Shown here piece after piece: positions 26,701-48,324 of a stretch of DNA of 64,000 bases. The notes beneath the pieces were generated by a model. That model was not told where the DNA came from. It searched no databases and saw nothing but the letters and a program-made list of their open reading frames with translations. Each line of letters starts with the position of its first letter. The stretch's first letter is position 1. The position numbers were made by a program, and so were the translations under genes. Origin of the DNA: Lepidodermella squamata (taxonomy: Eukaryota > Animalia > Gastrotricha); assembly GCA_047495785.1 (NCBI GenBank), contig JBLDXI010000032.1:1860001-1924000 (forward strand), read 5' to 3'.

Positions 26701-29546
26701 GACCAGGGACGCATTAGGCGCGTTGATATTCCTCATATCTGGGCGGCATATGATCAGAACCTTCATGAGTGGCTTCTGAAGCTAACTGAGGCCTTTGATT
26801 TGACTTTTCCGTTGAAAAACGAGCCTGTCTCGATAGTTCCATGCCTACTACCGGAGAATCCGCCTGAAACCATGGTTTTCCCCAGCCTTGATGAAAACCC
26901 AGGACATCGGCAAACTAAGGTTGTTTTCATGTTCAGATATCTGCCCACTGGGCTTTTCAATAGAGTTCAAGTTCGCCTGTGCCAGTTTTCGGAAGGAGCG
27001 ACAATGTGGAGGCGCGGTAGTTTGCTCAAGAAAAACCAGCATCACGCCCTACTCTCACAGCCCGATTCCACGACTGTTCAAGTCAAAGTTCAAGGCCCCT
27101 GCCCTGAGAATATCGCATTCCTTATTCTTGAAGTCGTTGACACGTTAATAACCGAGTCATTTCAAGGGGTCCAACCCGATTACCTATTCGCATGTCCCGC
27201 GTGTGTTACGATTAGGTCACCAGATCCTAGCATGTTTGAACGATCGCGAATTAGACGCGCTAACGAATTGAAGGTGCCGTTTTTGCAGTGCTTGAACTAT
27301 TTCCATTCAGTTGGAACGCAAGAGCTCCGACAGCTATTCCCAGCTGAATCTTCGGCAGAGTTCGAAACTCAATTCTTCAGGACCATGCAAGACATTACTA
27401 GTCTGCAGCAAAACATTAAGATAGATATTCTAATAATTGGATGCTCGGCTGATGCTAAGCCCGAAGAGCTGGAAAACTGCGTGTCTACACCGGACGTTGG
27501 GAAAGATATCGAGGTGCTTTTTCCTAAATTGAAGGTCGTCACAGTGCCCGATCCGGACTCTTCATCTGATGCTGTTTCGTACGACCAGCTTAATGTCATG
27601 ATTCGCCAAGCTCGTGTTGTCGTCTATTGTCTATCAGCGCCTTTTATGGAGAACGACAGATGCTTAGGCGCCTTTCTTACCGGTCGAGAATCGCTAAAGA
27701 AGCCTAACTTGGTCATTATTTTGCGGGACTTCAATCTTCAGAATTACCCTACTCTCGCATTCCAAATGACCGATGACCTCTACTACAAAGCTATCAATCG
27801 TTCTAGGTACAGTCCAGATGAGTTGAAGAACCGAATTCTAATGCCGTTGGAACTGGTTGAGGCTCAGGAAAGGACCAAGGTTACTGTCTCGAAAAAGAAG
27901 CGACCAGATGTTTTCATTTCATATTGCTGGTCCAACAGTCGCGATGCCGTAAATAAGGGCTCAAAAGCTATTCAGAAGGCTTTGGGAGTAACAGATCCAC
28001 GAGATATTAAGAAGTACCTGGCTGATCATGGCTTCAGTTGTTGGCTTGACATCGAGCAAATCGGACTTGGAGGACTTTTTCGCGATATTGCCGATGGAAT
28101 TCGCTACGCCCAGGTTGTTGTGGTTTGCGTATCGGATGAATATATAAAATCGGAAAATTGCTTACGTGAATTTCACTTCGCCACCACCAGCCTCCGTCGA
28201 CCTATCGTTCTTTGTCCTGTCGGAACGGGAATCGACTGGCAAACGTCCGAAGTTAACCTGATTGTTTGTCAATCAGCTACTACAATAAATTTCCAAGTTG
28301 ATATAAAAGAGAACTGGGAGGCTCTTATTGAATCTGTAAAGAAGCATATCAAAATGAGGGATGACGAAGCAATTGCCCAAAGCGAAGATCCCAACCAGCA
28401 TGCGCTATCTAAACTCGGTCGACGCAAGACGTTATTGAACATAGCCAATGCTGAAGCTAACAGTTCAGCGACTGAGAAATCGTTGATTTTGCATGAGGTT
28501 ATCGAACTTGGTCAAAGGAAAATGCTAAGGCAACTTAGCGGCTACAGCCAAGCGGTCGATACGAGGCCCTATCCTAGGCTCATTTTGCTCGATGCAAAGA
28601 CACTTCCGGATCCTCCGAAAGAGAAGCGGAAAAATAAAGGCAAAAGCGATGATGACGAAGGAGCGAGTGAAAATGCTGATAAGTCCAAAGAAGCAGCGCC
28701 CGAAATTAGGTTAGATCTCCGTTTTAAGATTTTTTCTATACAATTGTTCCGTTTTAAAGGGATAACGATGAGGCGAACGTGCAAGTGGTAGATGAAGCCA
28801 CCGAACCTGCTGAAAAATCTCCTGAATCTGCGGAAGCTAAGGACGATGATAAGAAAGGCGACGAAGATGAGGAGGAACGAGAGGGAGAAATAATTGAAGA
28901 TGATCCATACGAGGGGTTAGACGTAACTGATCCCTTCAATCGACTGAAATGGCAAATTAAGTTTTTGTGTGAACACGAAAGTGGCTGGCATCCAAGTGAA
29001 CACAGCATAGTAGTTACTATACGTCAATTCCAGCAGTTTGGTCTTGGTAGCCCTGGTGAAGCTTTCAGATCCGCAGCTGGCTATTTCGGACCTATGCTCA
29101 CGTTTTTAAAGCAGTCCGGTAACACCACGCTAGAGCTTTTTACTCCGAAGCAACCTGAATTAATGAATACATGTGCTGAAATTGTCGCCCAGGTTGATCA
29201 GCTGATAACTCCTGGCCAAGAAGTGTTTCAGGATAACTACGTCTCCTTCAGGCAAATGGTTATGTCTCTAGATAAACAAAATCAATGCGGCGGTCTTAGG
29301 CGCTGCTTATTGGCGATGGGGAAAGAGCTGTGGCTATGTGATGAGCATCAAGGTTCTTCAAATTATCGCGCCAAAGCTGTGGCCGCAAGTGATAATAGCG
29401 CTGGAGCAACTGCTGAACCTTCAAAAGAAGCGGCTGCTGAGATTGATTCTGCTGATACTTTGGACAATGCAAAATTAGTACCTGTGAACAGACCTCATTT
29501 AGATGCTATCAAATCCTCATATAGTCGAGCTTGTGTTGTGCAATAG
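20770..29546 (+). CDS. ROCO-1: Cys-LRR / degenerate Roc-COR / MBT / LRR / Roc / COR / TIR-like / TIR / CaaX; no kinase domain
   Basis: ATG 20770 (MKKGPQK) with three short 5' exons. MBT GMRLEAVD..FDGW..FDYW at about 23755. LRRs LxxLxLxxN. Roc motifs GLGGAGKT (25951), WDFAGQ, VGTHCD. COR IINPQW..FRYLPTGLFNR. TIR DVFISYCW..NCLREF. Intron at about 28710-28759; ends SRACVVQ*. Confidence 0.88.
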
Positions 29547-29655
29547 TTGTGCTTGCCTATTTTATTTTTTATGATGGATTAAATGACCAATGTTGATGTA
29601 GGCTTGTAATTTGATTTACTTTTTCTCTCAGTGCTCGTGTAGAGTTTTAAAAGAG

Positions 29656-32600
29656 ATGTCCGACGCGCCTAGTCGCAAGGCGAAAAATCAAGGTAGAGTT
29701 CATACATAGCCTTTTCCATTTTCAAAGTTTGAATTTCAGGCGACGGCTCCCCCGAAGTGAGCTTCAACTTGACAAGCCTTTTCTACAAGCTCTCAGACAG
29801 TTTCTCAACTCCGGCAAAATATCTGGTAAGTTTCATTAGTACCTTCCTACTATCTGCTTGACCGAAGAGTTTTCCAGAAACTTTTCGAGCAGTTTGCTGA
29901 CAAAAAGATCGAAGCTATCAACGCGAGGCAACTTGATCCCTTGACAGATGAGCTACTTTGCTTTCCTGCTATCACTACCCCGAAATTCGACTTTGTAACA
30001 ACCCTGGATATTTCTTTCACGTCTTGCGTAAGCGACACTGGAATCCGATGTATTGCTCAGTCCTTGAAAGCGCTGAGTAGCGTGAATGTGGCTGGGTGTC
30101 GCCTTCTGACGGAGAGCTCTTTGCGATGGCTTGATGTTTCAGGCGGCTCAAGGATGATGAAGTTGAATTTCGATTGGACCTCTGTTAGATACGTTCCATC
30201 ATGGACGGTTGATGCTTCACTTCGCAGTTTATCAATCGAAGGCTGTCCCCTAGTGTTGAAACCACAGAAGGTCTGGGACCCGAACTACACCCCAAAATCA
30301 ATCACCTTGGCCAAAATTGTGGTTTTGAAACCTAAAGAAATGGGCCTATCATCGATTTCGGGGCAGATCTTTCCTTGCGATGAACCTTCGTCTATCGCTG
30401 GCATTCCTTCCGTCGCTTACTGCTATAAAAGCGGTCCTTTTCGCGTTTTTGAATGTTGTGATGACGCTTGGGCTCAATTCATTCTTTCCGATAACTGCTT
30501 CGTAATCCTGCCCGTTGTTCTTGAAGAGAGAGCGTCTAGGGCTAATTTGGTAGAGTCGGTGGTTAGCCGGTTGAATTTAGTCGCATGTCTTGTTCGAAAT
30601 GTTAAATTTCTCGTTGTACCTGTTATCAAGGGGATGGCGAATACAAACTTTACACAGCTTCGCGGGGAGCTTACGGAATTGTTTAGTACGGAGACGTTTC
30701 CGACTGAAGCTAACTTCATTTCCGATGTTCGGCAATCAATTTTCAATAACTTGACGAAGACTGATGTGCAATTCACTGATTCCTATGCTGAGGTTCAAAA
30801 ATTTATCAACGCGGAATTGATTTCGCATAAAACATTACCCAACATCGCACAGCCGCTGTTTCAGGCTTTGGAAAATTCGAATTTCTTTTCGCGGCAGGAT
30901 AACGCAATGGGAACTCTGGGGGACTTCCTTGAATCATTGAGTGTTAACGATGTTGTACCAAATTGGTCATCTTTCTTAAGCCTCATGGTCGAGACTGGCA
31001 ACTGCTGGCTAGAAGCTCGAACAGCTATGTGTTCAGATTACCCTTCAGCTATCGGCCCTTCCCATTTGTACTGCCCTATAACGCAGTTTGTGCAATTAAT
31101 CTCAAGTATGGCTCAAACGGCGTCTGAGATAACTGCCAGCCCGGAAAAAAATAGCTGCTTACCCGAGGAAACTCCCTTGCTTACTGCTAGCAGTTTGCTT
31201 GGCGGTTTGGTGGATAGTTATGTGGCAAAACGGTTCATTGGGGTTTTGGAATTAAAGGGAATAGTTTTTGTGTTAAATGACTCTCCTATTTTACCTTTGT
31301 CCTTGAGGCCAGACCCTCCAGTAGATTTGAATCATTTTGTTGAGCGGAAACCAGGTGACACTGTAATTGAGTTATCTTATCCTTTATTGTGTAATTCTAG
31401 TCACACCTTTCCCGCTGTTCTCTCACTGCTGACGAAAATTTTATGCCCGACAACAGTGTGGAAAAGCGGTGCCTTTTTCTGCGAATCTTCTTTCCTCGAC
31501 GTTCTAGTCACCGCGAGTGATCGAAATTTGAATTTGAGGTTTAGCTTCGAAAGTTTTGCCTTGAAAAATGCCGCAGATGATGACCCGTTGAAGTCTTCGC
31601 TGTTAGGCTCTCTATCAATTTTGCACACTGCTTGTTGTGCAGTGCTTGCTCCGTTCGCAGCGGCTAATATTGAAAATGTGGGCACATCACACGGTATAGC
31701 TTGTATCCAGCAAACAGAGCATTGGATTGAATACAGCCGATCACTTCCTTTTTATAATCAAGGCGCTTCAAATAACTTGCGATGCCGTGACTGTTTTCTG
31801 GATTTGAAGAGTCTATGCGCGCTTCAAAAAGTGCAGCTAGTTTCGAGACCATGCAGCGACCTGATTGCAGTCGAAAGTTTGATGACTGATAAAAGCTCCG
31901 AAGATTTGCGATTTGAAGTTGCAATCTCTAACTATTATCTCGCAATTGACGAGACCGCCAAGCCTAACGACTTAGCTAGTGAACCGATTTTCGTGTATTT
32001 TGGCGATGTCAGTAACTTGAAGAAAGTGACGATTAGCCCTTCTTCTACTGAACTTTCCAGCCAATCGGAAACTGAAGCTCTTAACTTGGAATTTATTGCA
32101 GGGACGCTTATCTGCACCACGAAAGGTAAAGATGTTGGTAAAGATAGCCTTAAGCCCGTGAAGTGCGAAACCTGTCTTGTCGAGGCCTGTATCTCTTCCA
32201 ATAGGGAACTGAATGTCATTGTTTCCATAGGGGCTAAGAAGGCGTTTGAAGCTAAATTTAACAGCCCTTCACGATCAATCACATTTACAGTGGATCTCAA
32301 AGCGTCCTCTGAACCGCAATCCGCATCAAAGATGTCCCCTATTTATTTACATTGTCTAAATTCTAACGCAAGAAGTTTGTCGAAAGCTTCTTGTATTGTC
32401 GAGGGTATGGCCTTGGAGGCTGTCGATCGCAAGACACCTCATTTGGTTTGCGCCGCGCATGTCGCTAAGGTCAATACCGATGGCCGTTGGCTTATAAGAT
32501 TCGACGGTTGGTCAAACGACTTCGACTATTGGGCGAAGCCGAATTCGGCAGACCTTTTCCCTTGTGGGTTCATGGAATATCTCGCGCAGAACGAAACGGC

Positions 32601-35600
32601 TTTCGAAGAATGGAATGCTGCCAGAGGTGGGGAAATGAACCGGAATTTACAAGCGCCGCGTGACACGTCATACGGCGTTCCAATTTTTCCATGGGAAAAA
32701 TACTTTGCGGACAATAAAAAATCGAAAATCGGTGTCCCTGTACCATTTCATTTGTTCAATAAGTCACACCTTTGTGGCTACGACAACACGATGTTTTGGC
32801 GGCGCTTTCCCACTCTGACCAGCGACATTAAGACCTTGACGAACTACTGCGCGACCGCTATACCTCGCTTGTACGAAGATTCGATTGATGATTCAGGGCT
32901 TGCGGTTACGCCGGGTATGCGCCTTGAGGCTGTGGATATCAAAAACCCTGAATTGGTCAGTGTTGCCCATGTGAAAGCTGTTACTAGAGATGGCTTATGG
33001 TTGATATCTTTTGATGGCTGGGATTCAAGTTACGATTACTATATTGATCCTTCAGACCCTAAACGAATCGACCTATTTCCATGTGGCTTTATGGAATATG
33101 CGAATTCGAAACCTGGTGTTTTTGACGAGCTACTCGCCGCTTCAGGTCGCGACCTGAAGCGTGAGCTCCAGCCACCATTGGGAACAAACATTGGCAGCGA
33201 GTTTTCATGGGATACGTATCTTGGGCATATTATCAAGGGAAATGACAATGGGCCAGCTCGGCCAGTTCCTTTGAGTAAATTTTATCCATCCAAACTGTTC
33301 GGGTTTATTGTGCCCGAAAATCTTAGTTGTCACGATGCTGTTGAAGAAACGAATAATACTGAAAGTGGAACCAAGCGATTTGCTAGTTATTCATATAGCG
33401 AGATTTTCAAACAACCGCAGTTCATTCCGTTGCCAAAAATGACTAATGAATTGATGCAGTGGCCGTCTCGTATACGATTCACTAAAAAAGAGTTGACCCA
33501 TCCATATTTCATCTGTTGCTCCTGTGATCAACTTCATTTCGTGAACGAGTCTGCATTAAATCGTGGCTGTGTTTCGATCAATGCTGTTCCGCCTTTTGCA
33601 TTGGCTAATATTTTGATTACCCTACTTCAACAGTCCCGAATTGTACCTGATATCTTCGATCATGTTTTCGAGAGTGTTGATACCAAAGAAAAAGGGTCTC
33701 TCGCTGATTTTGAGAAGTCATTGAAACAAGTTGTCTTGCCTTTCTTATTGGACTATCTCACAATTCACTGCGCTTTCGTCGGGGAATCGAAATCTCGTAA
33801 AACTACCGAGAAATTGATCTATTCAATCTACGATCAAAATGAGATCAACAGTGCTAAGTCTGCAGGCGAGCTGTACCTTGCCGGTCTGAAATCAGGATGG
33901 TCAGCTGTTGAATTAGTTCAAGGCCAGGAGCATCTATTGCTTGACATGAGTATTGCCGAGCCTGAGATCTTCGGACGTGATACATTGTGTCCGAGGTTAA
34001 TTTGTGGCCAACATGCCTATCACTACGCCATGTTGAACAAAGATAGCTCAAAACCTCGTTTGACGCTCTCCGCCAAATCGCTCGGGCATTTGCACGATAT
34101 TTTTGTGACAAAATGCTCGTACAGCTCCGAGGATATCCAAAGCCTCGAGAAATCTTTGGACCAACATCACCCAGAAATAGCCCTTTTCTGCGGCACATGG
34201 TCTGAAAATTTGTTCTCAACGGGATTTTCGACTAAAAAAATTACCGAGCTGGTTTTAACTCACAATCAACTCACAGATTTGCCAAGCGGTGTTTCAGCAA
34301 TGGTTGAGACGCTGAAGTCACTCGACCTGTCATACAATCCTCTCGCTCGAATACCCAAAGTTGTTTTTCAAATGAAGTCACTTGAGAGCCTTAGGATAGA
34401 TCACGCTCCGGTAAAAGAAATCGACAATGAAATCGGTAATTTGACATCGTTACGCCGATTATCTCTGCGCTTCAATATGCTATCCGCTTTACCAGAAACT
34501 CTCAAAAGCTTAAATAGCTTGGAAAATCTTGATCTGACCGGAATGCCATTAATATTGAGTAATGACCCTGTTGATAAGGAAAGTATGATCGCCTTCGTGA
34601 AGGAAAATGACTATCCTATCGAAATTGAGCAAAAGTTGTCTAGTTTGTTTGTCAATGGCGTTAAGTCTGTTTCGAAGGATTCAGCGAATAGATTCCTGAT
34701 GAATGAAGTCCCGAGATTGAAAGCGTTCGATCTCCCTCGCTTGCCCTCAATTATTGAGTTGATCATGCCTAACCAAGGTTTCCCTTCGGTATCAGATATC
34801 CTAGGGAGGTGTACGAAGCTTCGAAAGGTTGATTTTTCAGGGTGTTTGAACCTCCAATCAATCGATTCGGCTATCGCATCTTGCCCGTTAGATTCCTTGA
34901 GCTTGGAGAATTGCCCCAACTTGACCACGCCACCTGCAGATATACGAGCAAAAGGCTTTGTAGCAACTCATGCTTATTTCAAAAGACTTGTCTCAGGATC
35001 TGTTGTATGCAAGAGATCCAAGTTGATGCTTGTCGGACTTGGGGGTGCCGGTAAGACAAGCCTACTACAAGCTTTGATGTCATCGGACGATGTAGCCATT
35101 AGTCGGGATGTAGATGTTACAGACGGTATCGACATCCAAACTTGGCGAGTCGCAACTGAGGACGACTCTTTGCTTGATCTGCGTTTGTGGGACTTCGCTG
35201 GACAGGTCGCTTACTACAACACCCATCAATTTTTCATGTCTCGCCGTGCTGTTTACGTTTTGCTATGGAACATTCGTTTAGGCCATGAGCATGCAGGGCT
35301 CGACTTCTGGCTCAGTTCTATCGCTAGCCATGCCCCTGATGCACCCGTCATTGTAGTCGGAACCCATTCGGATCTACTTCAAGGCTACCAACCTGTTTTG
35401 CCAGAGGCGAAGTACCGCCAACGTTTCCCATCCATTCGGGGTTTCTTCTACGTTAGCTCGTTGTCAGGATCGGGAATGGAGCCGCTTAGGAAGGAAATCA
35501 TTCAGGCAGCTCATTCACTAGAGGTAAATTTGAGATTTTTGCCCAGACTTCGCTAATTCTCATTTTTTGTTTATTTAGCATGTTGGTGAAGGTATGCAAC

Positions 35601-38384
35601 TTTTAAGGTAGATTCGTTTGAATTTTTCACTCGTTTTAATGTAGAAATACCTGTTGCTTGGCTGAATTTTGAGAGGCAACTGTTGGCTAGCAAAAATCGT
35701 GACCCAGCAACCACTCCTATTCTTTCGAAAAAAGTTATTCAGAAAATAGCCGACGAAAATGGGATCTACGAAAATGAGGAAATTGATCAAGCCTTGGAAC
35801 GTCTGTCAGATCTTGGCTCATTGCTTTATTTCAGAAACGAAGCGCTGAAAGATCGAGTGATCATCAAGCCGCAATGGATTTTGAACACCTTATCTAAGTT
35901 GGTTTCCGTGAAAAATGCCTGCGTTGTTAATGGCCGCCTTAAACACGCCGATCTCGGTCAAATTTGGAATTTATACCCACCTGAACTTCTCAAATGGCTC
36001 TTGGAATTGACAGAAGCATTTGACCTTACTTTCCCCATTCGAACTGAAGAGCTATCTATCGTACCTTGTCTTTTGCCCGATGATCCACCTAATGCGGTAG
36101 GATTGCCAAAACTTGACGATCATCCGAATCATTACCAAACAACTCTGATGTTGTACTTCAATTATTTACCTGTTGGATTGTTTAACAGGCTTCAAGTAAG
36201 TTACCCTTTCAAACTCCTCATCTTTTTAGCCCTGATAAAAAATAGGTTCGGCTGTGGCATTATTCTGATAATGGATCGATATGGCGGCGAGGAAGTTTAC
36301 TTCACAAAAATCACCACGTGGCACTTTTGACCCAATCGGAAGATAGTTCAATTGAGGTTAAAGTCCAAGGACCTTGCCCGGACAACATTGCCTATCTGAT
36401 TCTCGAAGTTGTTGAGGCATTGATTAAGGAATCTTTTCAAGGCCTGAAACCAGAGTTTTCCATCACGTGCCCGGCTTGCGTTTCTGCCCGAATTTCAGAT
36501 CCTAGCGTGTTCAAACGGTCTCGGGTGAGAAGAGCTCAAGAGCTTCGTATTCCGTACCTTCAGTGTAGCAAGTATTTCCATTCTATTGGAACTCAAGAAA
36601 TTCGGCAGCTCTTCCCCGCCGAAACGCCAGATGACTTTGAATCGCAGTTTTCGCGGGCTATTCAAGCAATATCTAGCCTACAGAAAACGTTGCATATTGA
36701 TGTTCTAATTATCGGTTGCTCAGAGGATTCAAATGCGGCCGAGATCAAAATGCACGTCTCTACTTCAGAGGTCGGAAGAGATATCGTGAAAAATTTCCCA
36801 CAGGCCAAGGTTGTAGTTATTCCCGACCCTGATTCAGCTACGAATCCGATTTTATTCGACCAGTTGGCTTTCATGATGAGATCAGCTCGTTTAATTGTTT
36901 TCTGCTTATCGGAAAAGTTCATGGCCAGTGATCGATGCCAGGCCACGTTTTTCACCGCCCTTTCAACGCTGAAGAAACGTATCCTGACGATTATGATTCG
37001 CGATTTTCAGTGGGCAAAGTACTCGGCCTTGGCTTTTCAGATGAATGATGATTTATTTATTAAGGCGACTGATCGATCGCGGTACAAGCCTTCGGATATT
37101 GCTGATTTGATCAAAAAGCATTTGGCCATTGGGACTGAAAGCTCCACCTTAAAGGAAAAATCTGATGTCTTCATCTCCTATTGCTGGCAGAACAGCCGAG
37201 ATGCGGTTAGCAAAGGTACGAAATCTACAGATAAATCGATAGGATTGACAGACCCAAGAGATATCAAGAAATTTCTTGTTGAAAGCGGCTTGAAATGTTG
37301 GATCGACGTTGAAAAAGTTTCGTTGGGCGGGCTATTCCGCGAGGTTGCTCATGGCATTGAAAACGCTAAATGTGTAGTTGTCTGTGTTTCGGACGAATAC
37401 GCCAAATCTGAAAATTGTCTTCGCGAATTTCATTTCGCTGTCAACGCCGTAAAATGTCCCGTCATCCTATGCGCTGTTGGGACAGGTTCCGCCTGGCTCA
37501 AATCCGAGGTCAGTCTGTTAGCATGTGAGAAAGCGCCTTTCATAAACTTCCAGCTAGCTTTAAAGAGCAATTACGACGAATTGCTGGTGACTATTAAACA
37601 GTTTGTTAAGGAGGATGAGATTCGAAATTTGAATGACGAGGCTAAAAAGTCCGCCTTAATTTTGAACGAAGTAACCGAGTTGGGTCAGCGGAAATTACTA
37701 CGGCATCTTGCTAATTTGAGCTCGCAACTAGCGTATCCTCACCTGGTTGTAGTCGATTTGTTGGAGAGTCCTAAGGATTCGAATTTTTCATCGCCACATG
37801 ACGCAGTTACTAAGGCAAAGTGGGGTGTTCGATTTCTGTGCGAGCATGAAGGCTCGTGGCATCCTACAGATAGCATTATTCCAATTGAAACGACTCGGCC
37901 AATACTAGATTCTCTCAATTATATTAGCGGCATGTTGCAATTTTTATCGAATCTCCCGCGTGTTTTGTCGCTGCAAATTTTCGATCCTCAAAATGAGAAA
38001 ATTATGGCCACTTTGATCGCTGAGATCGATCAATCAAAGTTTGACGTTGAATTTAAGTTGTTTCGTGATTTTGTTGTATCAATGGATCGAAATTTCTCTT
38101 GCGGTTCGTTGAAACGGTGTCATACGTCTCACGGTGTGGATCTTTGGTTGTGTACCCAGCATCAACTTTCAGCCAAGTCTGTGACTGAAACGCGAATTCC
38201 TAGTCTCAAACCGGTTGTTGCGCCGACTGCTGTTGCGAAAAAAGTTGAAACTCCGCCCGCTGCTGCGGCTAAAACTGCGGCTACTACTAATACTGCTGAT
38301 CAACCTGTAAAGCCTGTGGCAAAAGCTCCTTCTGGCAATGAGAAAACTGCTAAATCTAATAGTCGAGCTTGTTCTATGCAGTGA
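29656..38384 (+). CDS. ROCO-2: same architecture as ROCO-1 but with two MBT repeats
   Basis: ATG 29656 spliced in frame into ORF 29941. MBT repeats at about 32404 and 32914. GLGGAGKT at 35035. 13-nt microexon 35579-35591. Intron at about 36196-36245. TIR DVFISYCW; ends SRACSMQ*. Confidence 0.88.
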
Positions 38385-38461
38385 AATTATTTTTTGTTTT
38401 TAATTTTCAAAAATTATATACTTGTCAAATTCTATGACATTTTTCAATTTTTAGATTTTAA

Positions 38462-41400
38462 ATGCCTCCGAAAAAAGCAGCAGTTCCGGAGCCAAAGAAG
38501 AAAGTTCAGGCTAAAACGCTACCTGCTGGGAAAATTCAGCAGTTGGTGAGAAGTCCATCGCCCGTTGAACAGCAGCAACAGCAGCAAATATTTGTCGAAC
38601 AAGTCAGTAACAAAGGCGAGGAAGTTTTCGAAGAAGAAACCGAGGAGTTCCAAGAAGTTTCCCAGGAGCCATATGGCTTGCAACAGGAGTTGAAAGCTAA
38701 TTTGGAAAGAATTCCGTCTTGGGCGCGGAAGAATTCAAACAAAGGCATCGATGTCGTAGAACAGGTTTACATTCAAATAGTTAATGAAAATTGTCGCTTT
38801 ATTTTTGTCTACTTATTATAGAAGTTGGACCAGGCATTTCCCAGTAAGCGCCCTGTGAGGCAGGAGCTGAGTAACAACGCTCGTAAGGCTTTGAAAGGCT
38901 TTTTTCGCGAGATATTTAGTTTTTGTATTAAACAGCCCCAAGACCGATACAGCGAAAAGCTCCAGTTTTGACTACCGTGACAATCGATGTCGTTGATTTA
39001 GCCAAAAAAACGCCAGAAAGTTTCCGCTCGCCATCGGAATTTATAGTGAGTCACTTCAAATTGAGAAATTCGATAACATTAATAATTGATTTTTTTCAGA
39101 AACTGTTCGCAGTCGGGGCTAACGAAGTTCTCAATAGCGTTAAAATGCGCAAAAGCCGTGATGTTACGGATATTCTGTTTTACTGGCCTCGTTTCTCTGC
39201 GAAACAATTCAAAAATATTACGAATCTCGACATATCTTTCAGTTCGTTCGTCACTGATCTTGGTTTAAGGTGGATTTCCTTTTATTTACCCGCTCTTGAA
39301 GAGGTAAATTTCAGCAAGAAACATCTCATTTTAATATTAATATTGTTTTCAATGAAGTTAAATGCTACTGGGTGTCGATATGTTACCGAAAGTGGATTGA
39401 GATTTTTCCAGCGAGGCGAAATCAGCAAAACGCTCAACTTCGATATGACCTCTATTCGCTATCTACCCTCTCGAATTTCCTCCAATAAAGTGTCTGCTAA
39501 AGGGACCCCTATCATGGTGGACGAAGCTGCTGTTCTGAAAACTAAACGTAAAATCAAGCTTAAATGTTTTTCTGATTTTTCATTTCTTTAAAATTTACAG
39601 CGAATATCCCGCCTGAATTACCTGCGAAATTCACTGCTGCAAAAGTTGTGATTTTAAAGTCGAAGGACTTGCGAGATAGATCCATCGGACCGGAAATCGT
39701 GAAACCAGATGATCCCAGCGCTTTGATCGGATCCCCATCTTACATTTGCTCATATCGTAGCGGGCCATTTCGTGTCGTTGAATGCTGCGATTATACCGTT
39801 TCCAAGCTGGTTCTATCTGATAATTGCCTCGTAATTCTGCCATTTTTAACCGGAAGTTCGAGTGACTTTGTAAAATCAACATTAGCTTCAATTGAATCGC
39901 GTTTCAACTACGTGGTCACCGTGGTGAAAAATGCCAGCTTCATCGCAGTTCCAATCAACCTAGACCCGTCCGTAGATACAGATTTTGACCAAGTTCCGGC
40001 TTTGAATTCGGAAGTTGATGCGATGATTAAGGCGGCTGAGAAAGGTTCAGATGGAAAGGGAGAAGAGTTTAATAACTTCCCATCGGATCCTCGCTTAGCC
40101 ACCCTGCGTTTTCTTATGGATCACGATTTGCGAATTGAAGCGTCAAAAAAGGGCGTTCTACCCTGGTTAAGCAACCACATTCCCCACGCTGATATGCCTA
40201 AATCGGTTAATCTTTTGTTCCAAGCTGTTGAAAAATCGGAAATTCTTTCGCAAAAGGATAAGCCATTTTTATCGATCGGAAATTACGTTCAGGCAATGAA
40301 AAAATCTGTGATAACGCCCGAACTATCGCCGAAGTGGCCAGCTTTTTCAACAATTTTAGCCGAGACCGGAAATTGTTGGTTGGAACCTATTTCTTCAAAT
40401 TGTAGCGACGTGGCTAGTTCTATCGGACCGAAACAAATTTTAGCATCTTTTTCGAATTTCGTCAGATTTTTGAATGATTTTCTCGCTGTTTCCGACTCAA
40501 CGGCAGTCGCTGAGGATATTCAATGCCTTGCGCTAGACACGCCGCTTTGTAATGTTGAAAAAGTGAAAACTCTCATCAAACCAGCCGCGGGTAGTCATTT
40601 ATCTGACGAAGATATTTCTCGTTTTATGAACCACCTTGAGTTGAATGGAATCGCAATTTTCCGCCGCAAGTCCGCCCTTGTTCTCGGAAATCTTCGCCCC
40701 GAACCCCCCATTGGTCTCGACCAGTTCACTGAACCAGGTCAGCCGGCTCTGGCTGAAGCGTTAACGACAAATCACTTGAAAGTCTCGAAAAAATCCAAAG
40801 TGGCTGAGCCGAATACTGACCCAGCGCCCAAACATACGACACATTCCCATGTTATAAGGCTAGATTATCCGCTACTATGCAAACCTAGTGCGGTTTTTCC
40901 GCAACTGCTGGCGGTTTTGGTGAAAATTGTCCCGCCGAATTTACTCTGGAAAAACGGAGCATTTTTCTGTGAGACGTCGTTTTTAGACACCCTGGTTAAT
41001 TTCGACGATTCATCTCGCGTTGTCAAAGTCCGCTTTTCAGCTGAAAATTTCGTTTTCGATAGATCGATCGAAAAATCTCGCGGCATGCAACGGCTTGAGA
41101 CGGCAGTTTTGCATTCCTGCTCAGTAATCCACACTTTGTGTTGCCTTGTCTTATCGCCTTATGTTAAGGAGGATCTCACAAAAATCGGCCGATCGAACGG
41201 TATTAAATATTTGCCTTTCGAGAAAATTCGCCATGACGTTCATTTGAAACATTCGAGGGCGATTGAGACTTTCTCACGCCAGTTCGATCAAACCATCGCA
41301 AGGTGTTCAACCTGCCTGTTTGACGTGAAAGCCCTAGCCAATATTCGCAATTTATGCATGAACAGGCCATTTTATAAGGCCGGTGTAATCATCCGTGGCA

Positions 41401-44400
41401 GTGGTGTGAATGATTTATCAAAGAATTTGTCCCTATGTGATTGGGACACGTCTGATGAACTAGGTCAAATATCTTGCCTACCGAGTGCGTTCGTTGATGT
41501 GATGTCAGTCGATAATGTTCAGGCGATATTGGTCTATCCAGGGAAAAAGTTCGAAAAAGATTCTGAACACGTGAAATTGGTTTTCAACGAAGCTGGGAAA
41601 TTGGTCGGCCACTCCCTTGAAACAATCGCTAAGCCATCAAGTGGAGCTAAGGCAGCCCCAGCTAAGACTTCATCAGATTCGAAATCAAAAGCGACCACAT
41701 CTAGTAAAGAGGCGAAAACCACGCAACCTGTTAAGGCTGTTTCTCATTCAATTTCGTGTGGTCTGAGGATCGAAGCCACCTTAACTAAAAAAGGTTCGAT
41801 TGCGATAGAGGTTTCGATTTTAGGAAGCCCGGTTTTTGAGGCGACTTTATCGTCAAAACAGTCGAGCGTGACTGTAGTATTTGAGCCGAAAAATGCCGGT
41901 GAAACCATTAGCATTCCTATAAATTGTCACTCGATTGAACCTCAGGGTTCATACCTCAACGATTTTAGCCAAGCGTCAGTTGGGATGAGGCTAGAGGCAA
42001 TTGATCTGAAGAATAAGCATCTGCTATGTGTTGCTAGAATTGCTGAAATCGATTCAAATGGTCGCTGGCGGATCAGTTTTGATGGTTGGAATAGTACATT
42101 CGATTATTGGGCAGATCCGAAAACTTCGCGGGATTTGTACCCATGCGGCTTCATGGAGTACGTCCGCAGTTCTCAGGATAATCATGTCACGGTCAGGTTT
42201 AACGAAGAAAGACAAGTGGCTGTTTCTAAACAACTACAAGGTCCAAGCGGCAAGCCAGACGAATCACCGTTTTTTCAATGGCCAGAGTATCTGGAAACAT
42301 TGGCGGAGGAAAGCCCCGCCGCAATGCCCGTTCCGCTTCATCTCTTCGAAGAATCTCACCTACTTGGATTCACGGCTGTGGATTTTCGTGGGCAGTACAA
42401 TGTCCAAGTCCAAGACTTGCCTACCTTAACGCAGTATTGCGTAACCGCTCGTTCTTCGCTTCTTCAGCATAACTCTGTTGTGATTGATGGAGTATCCGAT
42501 CAAGGGTTACTTCAAACCCCCCGTTTCATCCCTCTCCCAGCGTTGAATTGGGTGTTATGCTGCTGGCCCTCAAGGGAGAGGTTAACCAACACCAGAGCGA
42601 CCCAGCCAAATTTCCTATGTTGCTGGCCCGATTTTATGCATTTTGTGAATGAAAGTGCGAGAAGTCACCCGACCGTGTCGATAAATTCGGTTCCACCCTT
42701 GGCTCTCGCGATAATTTTGATGAGGCTAATGAATCAGCCTCGATTCATCCCAGACGAATTCGACCAGCTATTCAGCGACCTCAACTCGTCAAATTGTCCT
42801 TATCCCTACGCAAGCATGGCGTCCAATTCGGAAAATAAGTCCTCTGCTGTCGAAAATTGCTTGCGTCAGTTTTTAATTCCATTTTTATTGGACTACTTGG
42901 CAATCCATTCGGCATATGCTGGTCAAACTATCGAAGGAATGGAAGAACGTTATTCGTATTCTATCAACGAGCCTAATAGTGTTGTTGAATCGGTAAACAA
43001 CTCGGTTGAAGCCTACCTTAAAAATTTGCATGCCGAAGGTAGTTCTCAGTCACGCTGGTCCGCAGTTACGATAAGCAACGAAAAACCCAAGCCTAAATGC
43101 TATTTATTAAACATGAGCGAGGCTGATAGCGAAATTTTCAACCGGGACGCGTTCTGCCCGAAATTAATGTGCGCCCAGCACGCTTATCATTACATCAATT
43201 TTACGAAGGCTGAGGAGGGCGAGTCGAAAATGAAATGGACATCGGCCCTTAATTCAATCGGTCATTTTCACGATAACTTTGTAACAATGTGTGCTTACAA
43301 CGCCGAGGATGTCAAGGAAATGAAGGGTCGATTTAACGAGTTATACCCTAATATGTCCGAATTCGCGGGTTTCCTCTCGACTTCCATGATTCGAACTGGA
43401 ATTTTTTCATGTACATTCCTGGCTGAGTTAGTAATTTCACATAACGAATTGGTCGATTTGCCGGCTGAACTTGCCCACCTAGCTGACACGTTGCTGAAAT
43501 TGGACCTATCTTTCAATCCCTTGCCTGAACTACCGAAAGTTGTTTATGAACTGAAATCTCTGGAATCACTGATAATCGACAACGTTCCGATCAAAGGTTT
43601 AGAAGAAAAGATCGGACAGTTAACAAATTTGAAGAACTTATCACTTCGCTATAATTGCTTATCGAAATTACCAGCGAATTTCATGCTATTGACTAAGCTT
43701 GAAACGATTGATTTGACTGGACTGCCGGTGTTGTCGAACAGCAATTCGACGGTTTACCTCGAGGAAATTGTTTCATTTTTCGAGAAAAATAACTTCCCGA
43801 AAGAAGCTAGCGATATACTAACAAAATGGGCCGAAAGTCCAGAGGGAAGCAAAACCCTTGATCGCGCTGCCGTCGATAGATTGAATCACCACCTTTTCCT
43901 CAATATTCCGAGGTTTCAATGCAAAGAAGATGAATTTCCTATGGATTTGTCGAAATTTCCCTCATTACAAGAACTGAGCCTTAGCAACCAGGGTTTGAAC
44001 AAGGTTCCGGATGAAATCGGCAGTTTGCCGAAACTTCGTTCTCTGGATTTATCGGGCAGCCTTACCCTGGAGATGATTTCCAACAAAATCGCTTCGTGCC
44101 CGATCACCTCCCTAAATCTTTCGAATTGTCCAGTCCTGAAAACGCCTCCAGCTGAGATTCGGAAACGTGGCTTGGTCCCGACTTTGGCGTATTTTAAACG
44201 GCTGATTCAGGGCTCAGTCACCTGTAAACGGACTAAATTGATGTTTGTCGGCCTGGGTGGGGCTGGCAAGACCAGTTTAGTCCATTCGTTGCTAGCCGAT
44301 AGCAATCTCGCGACTTCGCACTACGACGTAACAGATGGAATCGATATCAAAGATTGGAAAGTTGACTGTAAGGACGGTTCGACTATCGATTTTCGGATGT

Positions 44401-47400
44401 GGGACTTTGCCGGGCAAGTTGTCTACTACAACACGCATCAATTTTTCATTTCGAGCCGAGCCGTTTATCTTTTGCTATGGAATATTCGACTCGGCCACGA
44501 GCATGCTGGTCTCGAATTTTGGCTCAGCTCTATTGCGTGCCATGCGCCTAATGCCCCGATTATCATTGTCGGGACGCATTGTGACCAAGTGAGCGCTGAA
44601 AGGTCATTCCTGCCCGAAGTCAGTTATCGCGAACGGTTTGGGTCGATTGCGAATTTTCACTACGTCAGCAGTTTGACCGGCGATGGGATAGATGCACTGA
44701 GAGCAGATATCATTAAGGTGGCTCTTTTACAAAAAGTAATTCGATTTTTTGTCTTATTTTAAATTATTTCATTTCATTTTTGTCTTTTTTCAGCACATGG
44801 GCGAACGTGAGTTTTTTCATTATTTTTGCCATTTTTTCTAGATTTTCCGCTTTTATAGCTATCCCAGCTGCATGGTTGACTTTCGAAGAAAAACTCCTCA
44901 ATTCGGAAGCTGCTGAAAAGAGTGAAGCGCCTATCCTTATGTACGATAAGGTGGATAAACTGGGTGCCTCCTGCGGGATCTACGACCCGGATGAAATCGA
45001 CCAGGCCCTTCAATTTTTGTCCGATCTCGGCACTATTCAGTATTTTCGAACGGATTTCCTTCGCGATCGAGTCATCATCGACCCTCAGTGGATTGTTAAC
45101 GTGTGTTCAAACGTTGTTTCTGTTAAAAAAACGACGATAACTGATGGCAGGCTGAAGCACTCTGATATAAAGTTGATTTGGGAAGATTTCCCCACCGATC
45201 TCCATCATTGGCTGTTAAAGTTAACTGAGGCATTTGATTTGACGTTTCCGTTGAGAAAAGAACCGGTTTCAATAGTTCCGTGCTTATTGCCTGAAAATCC
45301 ACCTGAAAATTTGAATTGGCCGAATTTGGACGAAAACCCGGGTTTCAAGCAAACTAAACTGGTTTTCTCGTTTAAATACCTGCCTACCGGACTTTTTAAC
45401 CGAGTTCAGGTCAGGCTGTGCCAATTTTCTGATGGAGCTACAATCTGGCGGAGGGGTAGCTTACTACGTAAGAATCAGCACCTTGCCTTACTGACCCAAC
45501 CCGATGCTACCTCGATCCAGGTTAAGGTTCAAGGACCCTGCCCGGATAACATCGCATTTTTGATTCTCGAAGTAGTTGATACGTTGATCGTCGAAGCTTT
45601 CCAGGGCGTTCAACCCGATTATTTATTCGCATGCCCAGCTTGCGTTGCCGCGAGAGCTTCCGATGTTAGTATGTTCGAGCGGTCGAGGATTCGAAGGGCC
45701 TTCGAGCTTCGAATCCCGTTTTTGCAGTGTTGGAATTATTTTCACTCAGTAAGCACGCAAGAATTGCGGCAATTATTCCCGGCTGAGTCGTCTTCCGAGT
45801 TCGACTCGCAATTTTCTCGGACGGTTCAGGAAATTTCGAATATCAGGCAAACGCTAAAAATTGACATTTTAGTCATTGGATGCTCGGCGGATGCCAATCC
45901 GAAAGATTTAGCTAACAGCGTCTCAACCCCAGAAGTTGGGAAAGACATTGAAAAATCATTCCCGCAATCTAATGTTGTGATAATCGCCGACCCGGACGCC
46001 GGCACTGACGCGTCCTCTTTCGACCAACTCTCTGTTATGATGAGATCGGCGCGTTTGATCGTTTACTGCTTATCGGATAAATTCATGGCGAGTGACCGGT
46101 GCCAGGCTGCGTTTTTCACCGGTCGCGAAACGTTGAGAAAACAGGTTTTAATGATTTTAATCCGAGATTTTAACTGGAACCAATACCCGGCCCTGGCTTT
46201 TCAAATGAATGACGATATTTTCATCAAGGCGATAAACAGGGGTAGATACAAACCAGCCGATATCGCGACTTCAATCAAAAAACACCTTGAGCTTATTGCC
46301 TCGAAGGAGAAGGAAGATGTGAGCAAGAAACGGCCTGAAGTCTTCATTTCTTATTGTTGGCAAAATAGCCAAGACGCGGCGAGTCGTGGCACAAAGACCA
46401 ACCCGAAAGCTCTCGGCGTTACAGACCCGAGAAATTTGAAGAAATTACTCACCGAAAACGGGTTGAATTGCTGGATTGACGTCGAACAAGTCGGGCTCGG
46501 GGGTTTATTCCGCGACATTGCCGACGGAATTCGCTATGCCCAATGCATTGTCGTCTGCGTTTCCGATGAATATGTCAAGTCGGAAAATTGTTTACGAGAA
46601 TTTCATTTCGCGACAACTTCGGTGAAATGCCCGGCTATCCTCTGCGCTGTTGGTAACGGGGCGGAATGGCAGAAATCTGAGGTTAACCTGATCGTGTGCC
46701 AAAAAGCGCCTTTCATAAATTTCCAAGCTGATATGAAAGAAAATTACGAGTCCCTTCTAACCGCCGTCCGCCAGTTTGTTAAACCGAAAAATACCGAAGT
46801 TACCGAAAAACCGGTAACTAAGCGGGCGACCCTTGGTAAAATCGGCCGACTTCAAACCATGTCAAATATTCAAAGCTTTGATTCAACTGACGATCAATCC
46901 GGTGATTTGAAGCACAACTCCCTGGTTCTGCATGAAATGGTCGAATTAGGACAGCGGAAATTTTTAAGGCAGCTTATCGGTTATTCTGAAGCTGGTCGGC
47001 CGTACCCGAGATTGTTGGTTGTCGACGCGTTGGAGACGCCGAAAATCGTTGTGGAAGATGATGATTCAAGCTCGTCGGATGATGCGATAGTTAAGCTGGA
47101 CTGGTGCGCTAGATATTTGTGTGAATACGAAGGCGGGTGGCATCCGACCAGTGTTTCGTTAACACTTGACCCGAAAAACTCGGCGAATATCATCCACCAA
47201 TCGGCCGATTATCTAGGCCATATATTTTCATTCATTCGCCATTTGTCCAGCGCGTCGAGCCTTGAATTGCTGAGCCCTAAATCTGAGGAAATAGCGCCGT
47301 TTTGCGCGAAGGCACTCGCCCAAATCGAGCGAATGTCTAATCCTGATTCGAATTTTGAGGAGTATTATCAGAAATTCTGCGAGGTTGTGATGAATCTAGA

Positions 47401-47800
47401 CCAACACGGCTCGCAGGGTGGGCTGAACAAATGCCAACTCGCCCTGGGAAAGGAGCTGTGGCTGTGTCAGGATCATCAAAATTCGGTGTTATCCCGCGGA
47501 TCTGCTGAAAAAAATAACGTGGAGGCAAATCGGGGCGATGAAGAGCCGGGGCCGCTGATGTCAACTGGCAATCAAGAGGCTGCTAATGTTAATGCGAATA
47601 GAGCACGTGGACATCGAGTTGCTGCGAGAAATCAAAGCAATGACGTGGCGGCTGTTGGGTCTCCAGCAGCAGCTGTCGCCAGTTCGCCGACTCCGTCATC
47701 TGGCGTTGGGGAAAGGGCTCAGGCTCGAGGAGTTCAAAGTTCATCATCTATTCAAAGTGTTGATACAGCTACAACTAGCCGTGCCTGTTCTCTTCAATGA
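38462..47800 (+). CDS. ROCO-3: same architecture with one MBT repeat
   Basis: ATG 38462 (MPPKK). Cys-LRR LDISFSSFVTDLGL. MBT at about 41982. GLGGAGKT at 44250. 13-nt microexon 44794-44806. TIR EVFISYCW..NCLREF; ends SRACSLQ*. Confidence 0.88.
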
Positions 47801-48324
47801 TGAAGAAACAAGAACTTCCACTATTTTTCACTATTAAACTGTGCTGCTTATTTATGCTGTTGTGATATTATATCAAAAATTAGATTATTGGAAAATGATA
47901 AATTTTTTATAATTATTTTTGCTGTTTTTTATTTAGATGTTTTATAAAATCGTTAATATGACTCATCTTCAGAATATCTTCAGGGCCGAGTTCAGAGTAA
48001 TGCAAAAAATACTACGGCTCGTGATGTTTTACTACTAAACACGAGCTTTCCTACTCAATGCTTTTTGCATTTTTTGCTTTCTCTTTTCATAGCTACGCAT
48101 AATAGAATGTGCTGAAGCTGTCTGGCCTTTGGACAACAGGTTAACATCGAGGTGCTATAAATTTCTTTAAATAATTGCCGCTATAATTAATATTGTTATT
48201 CGCGCGCCATGATCACGCCACCTCAGCAACCTCTATGCGACTATTTTTTTCTAAATTTTATTTAAAAATTTAGACTTGTTTTTTGGAATCAGGTTATTTT
48301 TCCTAATCATAACCGGCCGTTACG

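What the first reader, a model, noticed from the sequence alone, without database searches (positions are those of the whole stretch)
29523..47800. All three ROCO paralogues end in a conserved SRAC-x-x-Q CaaX box
Seen: C-termini are SRACVVQ* (29523-29546), SRACSMQ* (38361-38384) and SRACSLQ* (47777-47800). Each follows an unconserved low-complexity tail, so the motif looks selectively retained. Established: CaaX with X=Q is a farnesyltransferase substrate; human LRRK1/2, DAPK1 and MFHAS1 are not known to be prenylated. Inference: these giant ROCO proteins are membrane-anchored in the way small Ras GTPases are.
Basis: partly seen in the sequence, partly recalled or inferred. Interest (0 to 1): 0.8.

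Follow-up and report, generated by a model that had tools for sequence, protein, structure and literature searches.

The report
Lipid-anchor tail on giant ROCO-TIR proteins
Three neighbouring giant switch proteins of a little-known invertebrate each end in a signal for attaching a greasy lipid, and the same ending is kept in over a hundred relatives from at least nine animal phyla, so this presumed immune family probably works tethered to membranes.

Summary
The three tandem genes end in SRACVVQ*, SRACSMQ* and SRACSLQ*, each after an unalignable tail of 68-110 aa. Each protein is MBT-LRR-Roc-COR-A-COR-B-TIR plus an unassigned ~190-aa post-TIR domain. None has a kinase domain or a convincing transmembrane helix.

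The box is a family trait, not a local quirk. Of 125 homologues with a complete post-TIR domain and a tail of at least 50 aa, 109 end in C-x-x-x. They come from at least nine phyla: placozoans, amphioxus, a hemichordate, molluscs, annelids, brachiopods, nemerteans, bdelloid rotifers and a nematode.

- The a2 position is I/L/V.
- X is almost only M, Q, S or L.
- Ser at -3 is invariant (114 of 116 unique tails).

A second architecture, Death-TIR-TIR, carries the same S-x-x-CaaL ending. CVVQ is the farnesylation site of human INPP5A.

Prenylation is strongly supported by comparison. Ras-like anchoring is only inferred: I found no palmitoylatable Cys and only a weak basic patch. Ser(-3) matches the PDE6delta high-affinity determinant. 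RNA data did not cover the stop codons.

I found no paper reporting this. The scan noted another "Roco-Death-TIR with prenylation tail" elsewhere in this genome (s1-391802, unchecked).

The parts
20770..29546 (+). ROCO-TIR gene A. The CDS start at ATG 20770 is tentative; the main ORF is 21343-28791 and the last exon 28760-29546.
   Evidence: Pfam finds MBT, LRR, Roc, COR-A, COR-B and TIR_2 in ORF 21343-28791. ORF list.
28710..28759 (+). 50-nt GT..AG intron of gene A that joins the TIR-bearing ORF to the tail ORF in frame
   Evidence: Sequence and frame arithmetic; the spliced product has no stop. Contig pieces of run X1 end at 28708 and start at 28759, which is weak support.
28003..28221 (+). 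TIR domain core of gene A (Pfam best stretch)
   Evidence: TIR_2 E=5e-13, residues 2221-2293 of ORF 21343.
28468..29351 (+). Post-TIR domain of gene A, interrupted by the intron and a long acidic insert
   Evidence: Three-way alignment; family alignment A1.
29340..29522 (+). Unconserved low-complexity linker of gene A
29523..29546 (+). Extended CaaX box S-R-A-C-V-V-Q plus TAG of gene A
   Evidence: CVVQ is the INPP5A farnesylation site.
29578..29583 (+). ATTAAA hexamer 32 nt after the stop of gene A (possible poly(A) signal)
   Evidence: Read directly; not tested.
29656..38384 (+). ROCO-TIR gene B. The start at ATG 29656 is tentative; ORFs are 29941-35556, 35683-36330 and 36318-38384.
   Evidence: Pfam finds MBT x2, LRR, Roc, COR-A, and COR-B and TIR_2. 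ORFs.
37260..37448 (+). TIR domain core of gene B
   Evidence: TIR_2 E=8e-17.
37641..38165 (+). Post-TIR domain of gene B
38154..38360 (+). Unconserved Ala/Pro/Thr/Lys-rich linker of gene B
38361..38384 (+). Extended CaaX box S-R-A-C-S-M-Q plus TGA of gene B
38462..47800 (+). ROCO-TIR gene C. ATG 38462 lies 78 nt after the stop of gene B; ORFs are 38462-38821, 38968-39591, 39648-44762 and 44780-47800.
   Evidence: Pfam finds MBT, LRR, Roc, COR-A, COR-B and TIR_2. ORFs.
46433..46633 (+). TIR domain core of gene C
   Evidence: TIR_2 E=1e-13. Two TIR_2 stretches are found in 45902-46900.
46895..47479 (+). Post-TIR domain of gene C (the folded model)
   Evidence: AlphaFold2 model with pLDDT 92.4 and pTM 0.87. 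Invariant C, E, W, H, W, L, C columns.
47468..47776 (+). Unconserved 110-aa linker of gene C
47777..47803 (+). Extended CaaX box S-R-A-C-S-L-Q plus a double stop (TGA TGA) of gene C

Best explanation
The three stops are the true C-termini, and the last seven residues form an ancient extended CaaX box with consensus [K/T]-S-[K/R/Q]-[A/T]-C-a-[I/L/V]-[M/Q/S/L]. It belongs to a metazoan-wide family of cytosolic ROCO-TIR proteins. The likely course is as follows. The Cys four residues from the end is prenylated. With X=Q the lipid is most probably farnesyl from farnesyltransferase; relatives with X=L/I would take geranylgeranyl. The last three residues are then presumably clipped and the Cys methylated. 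The lipid sits on a 60-350-aa flexible linker behind the post-TIR domain. It would therefore tether the LRR-Roc-COR-TIR machine to the cytosolic face of membranes, where GTP-controlled self-association could bring TIR domains together in two dimensions. Shown here: the motif, its exact position, its conservation pattern and the absence of any other membrane-anchoring element. Inferred: lipid attachment, membrane residence, and the role of the invariant Ser(-3). I take that Ser to be a determinant read by a prenyl-binding chaperone of the PDE6delta type, or else a phospho-switch.
For: The motif is in frame at all three ends. The proteins are ROCO-TIR. 92 of 120 first-pass homologues end in C-x-x-x. 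Among homologues with a complete post-TIR domain and a tail of at least 50 aa, 109 of 125 do, and 108 fit S-x-x-C-x-[ILVM]-x. Over 116 unique tails, S(-3) occurs in 114, a2 is I/L/V in 114, and X is M 38, L 30, Q 22 or S 18. This is the prenyltransferase-allowed set; no acidic, basic, Gly, Pro or aromatic residue occurs at X apart from two non-family tails. The nearest relatives (41-55% identical, from metagenomes) keep SRAC-x-x-Q. Synonymous codon differences occur within the box. Linkers vary in length and sequence. No convincing transmembrane segment was found. CVVQ is named as the farnesylation site of human INPP5A. CCIQ and CNIQ are listed as farnesylated. CSIM, CVIL, CVLL, CTIL and CTII, all present in family members, were modified by human FTase or GGTase-I in a yeast assay. 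The oyster homologue P0035 comes from 146 Logan assemblies on contigs of about 14 kb carrying an uninterrupted 3800-codon ORF. That is most simply a transcript, and it ends in SQACVLQ.
Against: There is no biochemical or localisation evidence. The RNA-like run did not reach the stop codons. No Ras-type second signal was found, neither a nearby Cys nor a strong polybasic patch, and a lone farnesyl binds membranes weakly. One review table lists RAP2C (CVVQ) as C20 rather than C15, so the lipid type is not settled. 16 of 125 full-tailed homologues lack the box, as do all 12 with tails under 50 aa (truncated gene models and a subfamily with a different ending, some members from monogonont rotifers); it is therefore dispensable in some lineages.
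Confidence: 0.72

Rival explanations
1. The proteins are prenylated, but the lipid mainly serves as a protein-protein handle or a sequestered switch rather than a standing membrane anchor. It could be held by a PDE6delta- or GDI-like chaperone, or by a pocket in the protein itself, and exposed only on activation, as described for the farnesyl of GBP1 (my own knowledge of the GBP literature).
For: The invariant Ser(-3) is not required for prenylation. Ser at -3 of INPP5E hydrogen-bonds Glu88 of PDE6delta, and both nanomolar cargoes (INPP5E SSTIC, GRK1 KSGMC) carry it. No second membrane signal was found. The long flexible linker could reach any part of the protein.
Against: Position -1 is mostly Ala or Thr, not the bulky hydrophobic Ile or Met of the high-affinity cargoes. 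No binding was tested. This reading is compatible with eventual membrane delivery, so it refines the main explanation more than it excludes it.
Confidence: 0.17
2. The terminal Cys motif is conserved for a reason unrelated to prenylation, such as metal binding, a disulfide, a C-terminal degron or a PDZ-type ligand.
For: The post-TIR domain has conserved Cys and His residues that might need a further ligand. The extra conserved Ser is unexplained by CaaX rules.
Against: The Cys is always exactly at -4. The a2 position is always I/L/V. X switches only among M, Q, S and L (plus rare I, V, C, T), which is the signature of prenyltransferase substrates. Q or S at the last position does not fit a hydrophobic PDZ ligand. 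The box lies 60-350 disordered residues away from the folded domain.
Confidence: 0.06
3. The stops are not the real protein ends. Transcripts splice past them within this tightly packed array, and the motif is an accident of ORF reading.
For: The genes are 78-110 nt apart with acceptor-like sites before the next ATG. There is no read-level evidence at the stops.
Against: More than 100 independently annotated homologues end at the same motif. The box shows purifying selection. Each downstream gene begins with its own Lys/Pro/Ala-rich N-terminus and repeats the whole architecture. ATTAAA follows the stops of A and C within about 35 nt.
Confidence: 0.03

Closest known systems
Ras/Rho/Rap small GTPases with C-terminal CaaX (e.g. 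RAP2A CNIQ, RAP2C CVVQ)
   Same: A G domain of the Ras superfamily followed by a flexible hypervariable region and a CaaX box. Gene A has the identical CVVQ box.
   Different: Here the G domain (Roc) sits about 1000 residues upstream in a protein of roughly 2,800-3,000 residues (estimated from the gene spans), with COR, two TIR-like units and a further domain in between. No palmitoyl Cys or strong polybasic second signal was found. An invariant Ser at -3 is present.
Characterised ROCO proteins: LRRK1, LRRK2, MFHAS1, DAPK1, Dictyostelium and bacterial Roco proteins
   Same: LRR-Roc-COR-A-COR-B core.
   Different: There is no kinase domain; TIR sits behind COR, and MBT repeats and a post-TIR domain are present. 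To my knowledge none of the characterised ROCO proteins is prenylated, and my literature searches found no such report. LRRK2 is brought to membranes by Rab GTPases (own knowledge), not by a covalent lipid.
Invertebrate ROCO-TIR proteins catalogued as 'ecTIR-DC 14' (Gerdol et al. 2017, as cited by Kamm et al. 2019, PMC6321704) and as ROCO-containing 'TLRs' in Aplysia (PMC9334734)
   Same: Same family: about 3000 aa, LRR + Roc/COR + TIR (+MBT), no transmembrane domain. The Trichoplax protein P0057 is a hit and ends in CSVM.
   Different: Those papers call the function speculative and, in the text I could read, do not mention a prenylation signal. The original Gerdol paper was not available.
Prenylated innate-immune proteins of vertebrates: GBP1/2/5, OAS1 p46, ZAP-L (own knowledge; the OAS1 paper is cited)
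   Same: Large cytosolic immune proteins, the GBPs being GTPases, whose CaaX box directs them to membranes. The family boxes CTIS and CTIL equal those of GBP1 and OAS1 p46.
   Different: Unrelated folds and effector domains. Here the effector is a TIR pair and the switch is a ROCO module.
High-affinity PDE6delta cargoes INPP5E (…SSTIC-SVS) and GRK1 (…KSGMC-LVS)
   Same: Farnesylated Cys with Ser at -3, the residue that hydrogen-bonds PDE6delta Glu88. GRK1 also has Lys at -4, as does the family consensus.
   Different: Position -1 is Ala or Thr here rather than Ile or Met. Binding was not tested.
Lipid- or lipid-binding-targeted TIR adaptors (TRAM N-myristoylated, TIRAP/Mal PIP2-binding; own knowledge)
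   Same: TIR signalling proteins placed on membranes by a lipid device.
   Different: Those are small N-terminally targeted adaptors. Here it is a C-terminal isoprenoid on a giant GTPase-TIR fusion.

Membership tests
CaaX prenyltransferase substrates | Cys exactly four residues from the C-terminus | tested here: met
   Also true of 109 of 125 full-tailed homologues.
CaaX prenyltransferase substrates | a2 aliphatic or otherwise compatible, and X from the accepted set (FTase: M, S, Q, A, C; GGTase-I: L, I, F) | tested here: met
   a2 is V, M, L and X is Q in the window. In the family a2 is I/L/V in 114 of 116 tails and X is M/L/Q/S in 108 of 116. Literature: CVVQ in INPP5A; CCIQ and CNIQ farnesylated.
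CaaX prenyltransferase substrates | Accessible, flexible segment upstream of the Cys | tested here: met
   The 68-110-aa tails rich in A, S, T, P, K and N are unalignable and vary in length. Family tails run from about 50 to nearly 500 aa, mostly 60-350. Disorder is inferred from composition, not predicted with a tool.
CaaX prenyltransferase substrates | Covalent isoprenoid on the Cys in vivo | not testable with these tools
   Needs metabolic labelling, an in vitro assay or mass spectrometry.
CaaX prenyltransferase substrates | The stop codon is the end of the mature mRNA's reading frame | tested here: inconclusive
   Contigs of the possibly-RNA run X1 cover only 28648-29354. Indirect support comes from the homologues' ends and from the probable transcript contigs of P0035.
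Ras-type membrane anchor (CaaX plus second signal) | Palmitoylatable Cys or a strong polybasic stretch next to the CaaX box | tested here: not met
   0 of 103 tails have a Cys within 12 aa upstream. The mean net charge of the 20 upstream residues is +3, and about +3, +4 and +1 in A, B and C (sequences).
ROCO proteins | Roc GTPase domain directly followed by COR-A and COR-B | tested here: met
   Pfam Roc, COR-A and COR-B above the gathering scores in all three genes.
LRRK kinases (the name many databases give the homologues) | Protein kinase domain C-terminal to COR | tested here: not met
   No kinase hit in any ORF piece that was scanned; TIR occupies that position.
ROCO-TIR / 'ecTIR-DC 14' | LRR + Roc-COR + TIR in one polypeptide of about 3000 aa without a transmembrane domain | tested here: met
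   The Trichoplax member described in PMC6321704 is among the hits. The class name is taken from that paper; the original definition could not be read.
High-affinity PDE6delta cargo | Ser at -3 and a hydrophobic residue (Ile, Val or Met) at -1 of the farnesylated Cys | tested here: inconclusive
   Ser(-3) is met in 114 of 116 tails. Position -1 is Ala (70) or Thr (19), i.e. small rather than bulky. Binding was not tested.

The most novel reading that the evidence does not exclude
The extended ending [K]-S-x-[A/T]-C-a-a-X would be a sorting code rather than a mere anchor. The invariant Ser(-3) would be read by a PDE6delta/Arl-type prenyl chaperone that keeps these proteins of roughly 3000 residues soluble and releases them at one particular membrane, such as the cilium, a phagosome or a pathogen vacuole. 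Together with the Death-TIR-TIR proteins that share the same ending, this would define an ancient prenyl-dependent TIR signalling platform. It would have been present before placozoans and bilaterians split, and no vertebrate or arthropod member appeared among the hits listed here. It would also be the only ROCO lineage with a covalent lipid anchor.
Probability: 0.2. Interest if true: 0.8.

Novelty: new variant of a known kind. Interest (0 to 1): 0.62.

Why it matters
ROCO proteins are studied mainly because of LRRK2, whose recruitment to membranes is central to its activation and depends on other proteins. A whole animal ROCO lineage with its own covalent lipid anchor gives a natural comparison. 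It also gives a simple handle for experiments: Cys-to-Ser mutants and farnesyltransferase inhibitors.

For comparative immunology, it turns a family so far labelled 'function speculative' into a testable model. That model is a GTPase-switched TIR effector held at a membrane, which parallels the prenylated GBPs, OAS1 p46 and ZAP-L of vertebrates. The invariant Ser at -3, shared with a second TIR architecture, is a new and cheaply testable clue to how such proteins are trafficked.

Tried and rejected
**RNA evidence.** Laying them gave no coverage of any stop codon. The pieces of X1 stop and start at the predicted intron borders, but no spliced joint was reported, so I count this as weak support only.

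**Fold of the post-TIR domain.**
- Foldseek against the PDB gave nothing with E below 0.1.
- VIA-align against 48,161 chains gave a best Z of 2.7.
- Profile comparisons of the domain with this family's own COR-A/COR-B gave no similarity (Prob 1.6% against the gene C COR sequence, 0.3% profile against profile). I therefore rejected the idea, raised by the ESM Atlas matches to ROCO proteins, that it is a duplicated COR-B.
- Pfam finds nothing in it.

**Literature.** Searches for ROCO+CaaX, TIR domain+CaaX, Roco protein+prenylation terms and ROCO+TIR+MBT found no report of a prenylated ROCO or ROCO-TIR protein. The PRENbase paper does not mention TIR or Roc proteins in its main text. The Gerdol 2017 paper that defined the class is not held.

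**Naming the organism.** The intronless QSOX-like gene has a best named relative at only 30% identity.

**Hydropathy.** The one strongly hydrophobic stretch, at the start of ORF 44780, lies before the apparent start of the exon, so it is probably intron read-through rather than a membrane helix.
Full report
**The observation**

All three sequences are in the window as described. SRACVVQ-TAG lies at 29523-29546, SRACSMQ-TGA at 38361-38384, and SRACSLQ-TGA-TGA at 47777-47803.

In genes B and C the box is in the same uninterrupted frame as COR-B, TIR and everything downstream (ORFs 36318-38384 and 44780-47800). In gene A the terminal ORF joins the 2482-codon ORF through a 50-nt GT..AG intron (28710-28759) that restores the frame.

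**What the genes are**

Pfam places MBT repeats, LRRs, Roc, COR-A, COR-B and a TIR_2 domain in each gene. A second, weaker TIR_2 stretch lies upstream of the first. I found no kinase domain and no convincing transmembrane helix.

After the TIR comes a conserved segment of about 190 aa that Pfam does not recognise. Then follow 68, 76 or 110 residues of low-complexity sequence, then the box.

The three genes lie head to tail, 78-110 nt apart. Acceptor-like sites precede the next ATG, and an ATTAAA hexamer follows the stops of A and C. The paralogues are 51-58% identical in the folded C-terminal part and 37-42% in the N-terminal ORFs, so they are old copies.

**Is the box more than chance?**

- Within the window, the linkers align only at the level expected of low-complexity sequence, while S, R, A, C and Q are identical in all three.
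- The codons for those residues differ synonymously among the three copies and two metagenomic relatives (AGT/AGC, CGA/CGT, GCT/GCC/GCA, TGT/TGC, CAA/CAG).
- Only 5 of 71 long ORFs in the window end in C-x-x-x, and three of them are these genes.

The decisive evidence comes from relatives:

- A search with the COR-TIR part found 120 large homologues, of which 92 end in C-x-x-x.
- A full-library search with the TIR-to-end part added more.
- Among 137 proteins with a complete post-TIR domain, 109 of the 125 that have at least 50 residues after it end in C-x-x-x. Of those, 108 fit S-x-x-C-x-[ILVM]-x.
- None of the 12 with shorter ends does. These are truncated gene models and a subfamily with a different ending (…ELKKYD…), some of whose members come from monogonont rotifers.

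The species named span placozoans, amphioxus, a hemichordate, molluscs, annelids, brachiopods, nemerteans, bdelloid rotifers and a Plectus nematode. The box therefore predates the split of placozoans and bilaterians.

Over 116 unique tails, the composition is as follows:

| Position | Residues |
|---|---|
| -4 | mostly K or T |
| -3 | S in 114 |
| -2 | K/R/Q in 93 |
| -1 | A in 70, T in 19 |
| a2 | I/L/V in 114 |
| X | M 38, L 30, Q 22, S 18 |

This is the substitution pattern expected of prenyltransferase substrates and of nothing else I can think of.

**Link to known prenylation sites**

- CVVQ, the box of gene A, is described as the farnesylation site of human INPP5A (PMC12450637). It is also the box of RAP2C.
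- CCIQ (PDE6A) and CNIQ (RAP2A) are listed as farnesylated (PMC7674641). That table gives C20 for RAP2C, so the lipid type for CVVQ is not fully settled.
- Boxes found in family members (CSIM, CVIL, CVLL, CTIL, CTII) were modified by human FTase or GGTase-I in a humanised yeast assay (PMC10541624).

**Beyond the plain CaaX rule**

Two features stand out.

First, the invariant Ser at -3 is not needed for prenylation. In PDE6delta-cargo structures the residues at -1 and -3 set the affinity. Ser(-3) of INPP5E hydrogen-bonds Glu88, and both nanomolar cargoes (INPP5E …SSTIC, GRK1 …KSGMC) carry it (PMC5512577). The family consensus K-S-x-A/T-C resembles this, except that -1 is small. I offer chaperone reading as the best guess for the Ser and a phospho-switch as the alternative. 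Neither was tested.

Second, no Ras-like second signal is present. No Cys lies within 12 residues upstream in any of 103 tails, and the mean upstream net charge is only +3. The anchor would therefore be weak or regulated, not a K-Ras-like or H-Ras-like one.

**A second family with the same ending**

Sixteen further TIR proteins of roughly 500-1600 aa in the full-library search end in K-S-[K/S]-[S/T]-C-x-[I/L]-L. The six I scanned are Death-TIR-TIR proteins. Those named come from a nemertean, a limpet and a rotifer. Their TIR parts are 36-44% identical to the query. The S-x-x-CaaX tail thus goes with a TIR module in at least two architectures.

An unchecked note of this scan describes a third, NHR-Roco-Death-TIR with a prenylation tail, elsewhere in this genome.

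**The post-TIR domain**

An alignment of 42 sequences shows invariant C76, E77, W82, H83, W189, L190 and C191, and near-invariant C180 and H194. This could be a metal site.

AlphaFold2 folds the domain with pLDDT 92.4 and pTM 0.87. It has no PDB match by Foldseek or by an exhaustive VIA-align search (best Z 2.7). The ESM Atlas returns parts of bacterial and plant ROCO proteins at TM 0.61-0.66, but profile comparisons with this family's COR-A/B show nothing. Its nature stays open.

**Transcript evidence**

Run X2 is DNA-like and covers the whole stretch with the box unchanged. One allelic A>C at 29521 turns the Tyr before the box into Ser.

Run X1, possibly RNA, gave short contigs only between 28648 and 29354. 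Their pieces end at 28708 and begin at 28759, the predicted intron borders, but there was no spliced joint and no coverage of the stop.

Indirect transcript support comes from the oyster homologue P0035. Its cluster holds 146 member sequences from Logan assemblies. Its longest contig, about 14 kb, carries an uninterrupted 3800-codon ORF that ends in SQACVLQ.

**Prior knowledge**

- The family is catalogued as 'ecTIR-DC 14' according to Kamm et al. 2019. They note that it is about 3000 aa long, lacks a transmembrane domain and has a speculative function.
- It appears as ROCO-containing 'TLRs' in Aplysia.
- Neither text mentions prenylation, and five literature searches found no such report. The founding paper could not be read, so an earlier mention cannot be excluded.

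**Verdict**

Prenylation is very likely, and membrane tethering is the most likely purpose. A 'Ras-like' anchor is only partly apt. I rate this a new variant of a known kind: a ROCO lineage, and a TIR module, with a conserved extended CaaX ending. Interest is moderate to high because it is directly testable.

Noticed in passing
window 46895-47479 (gene C); 37641-38165 (gene B); 28468-29351 (gene A): The conserved ~190-aa domain after the TIR has invariant Cys/His/Trp columns (C76, H83, C191; near-invariant C180, H194). It is modelled at pLDDT 92 but has no Pfam or PDB match. Its best shape matches are parts of bacterial and plant ROCO proteins in the ESM Atlas (TM 0.61-0.66). It may be a metal-binding domain of unknown fold.
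   Followed up: partly
proteins P0200, P0204, P0206, P0213, P0223, P0235: A second animal family, Death-TIR-TIR with an unassigned N-terminal region of about 450-1000 aa, ends in K-S-[K/S]-[S/T]-C-x-[I/L]-L. This is the same Ser(-3) extended box but of the geranylgeranyl type.
   Followed up: partly
window 16511-20525 (+): The gene just upstream of the ROCO array looks like nephrocystin-3 (weak DUF4062 hit, P-loop GGPGLGKT, weak TPR_NPHP3 hit). It starts MGSSCSS, which looks like an N-myristoylation plus palmitoylation signal. It would be a second lipid-tagged NTPase next to the prenyl-tagged ones.
   Followed up: partly
window 29547-29656 and 38385-38462: The intergenic gaps are only about 110 and 78 nt. 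Pyrimidine-rich AG acceptor-like sites (ttttctctcag at about 29621-29631; tttttag just before ATG 38462) have no donor in the gap. ATTAAA lies at 29578-29583 and 47833-47838. This fits operon-like packing with trans-splicing, as another note of the scan proposed.
   Followed up: partly
window 25884 and 29521: The DNA-like run X2 carries an in-frame 21-nt insertion after 25884 in gene A, just upstream of Roc. It also has an A>C at 29521 that changes the Tyr just before the SRAC box to Ser. The box itself is unchanged.
   Followed up: no
proteins P0052, P0088, P0129, P0132, P0145, P0166: A subfamily (two Brachionus proteins and several unnamed metagenomic ones) has the post-TIR domain but only 36-41 residues after it. 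Most of them end around …ELKKYD… with no Cys, an apparent lineage-specific loss of the linker and box.
   Followed up: no
window 13577-15289 (-): An intronless QSOX-like gene (thioredoxin + Erv1/Alr) has a best named relative at only 30% identity, while unnamed metagenomic contigs reach 52% and 41%. The source animal belongs to a poorly sampled lineage.
   Followed up: partly
locus L002 8359-8413: In the closest metagenomic relative the short intron sits inside the second TIR, not in the acidic insert as in gene A. Intron positions in this family shift while the terminal box stays.
   Followed up: no
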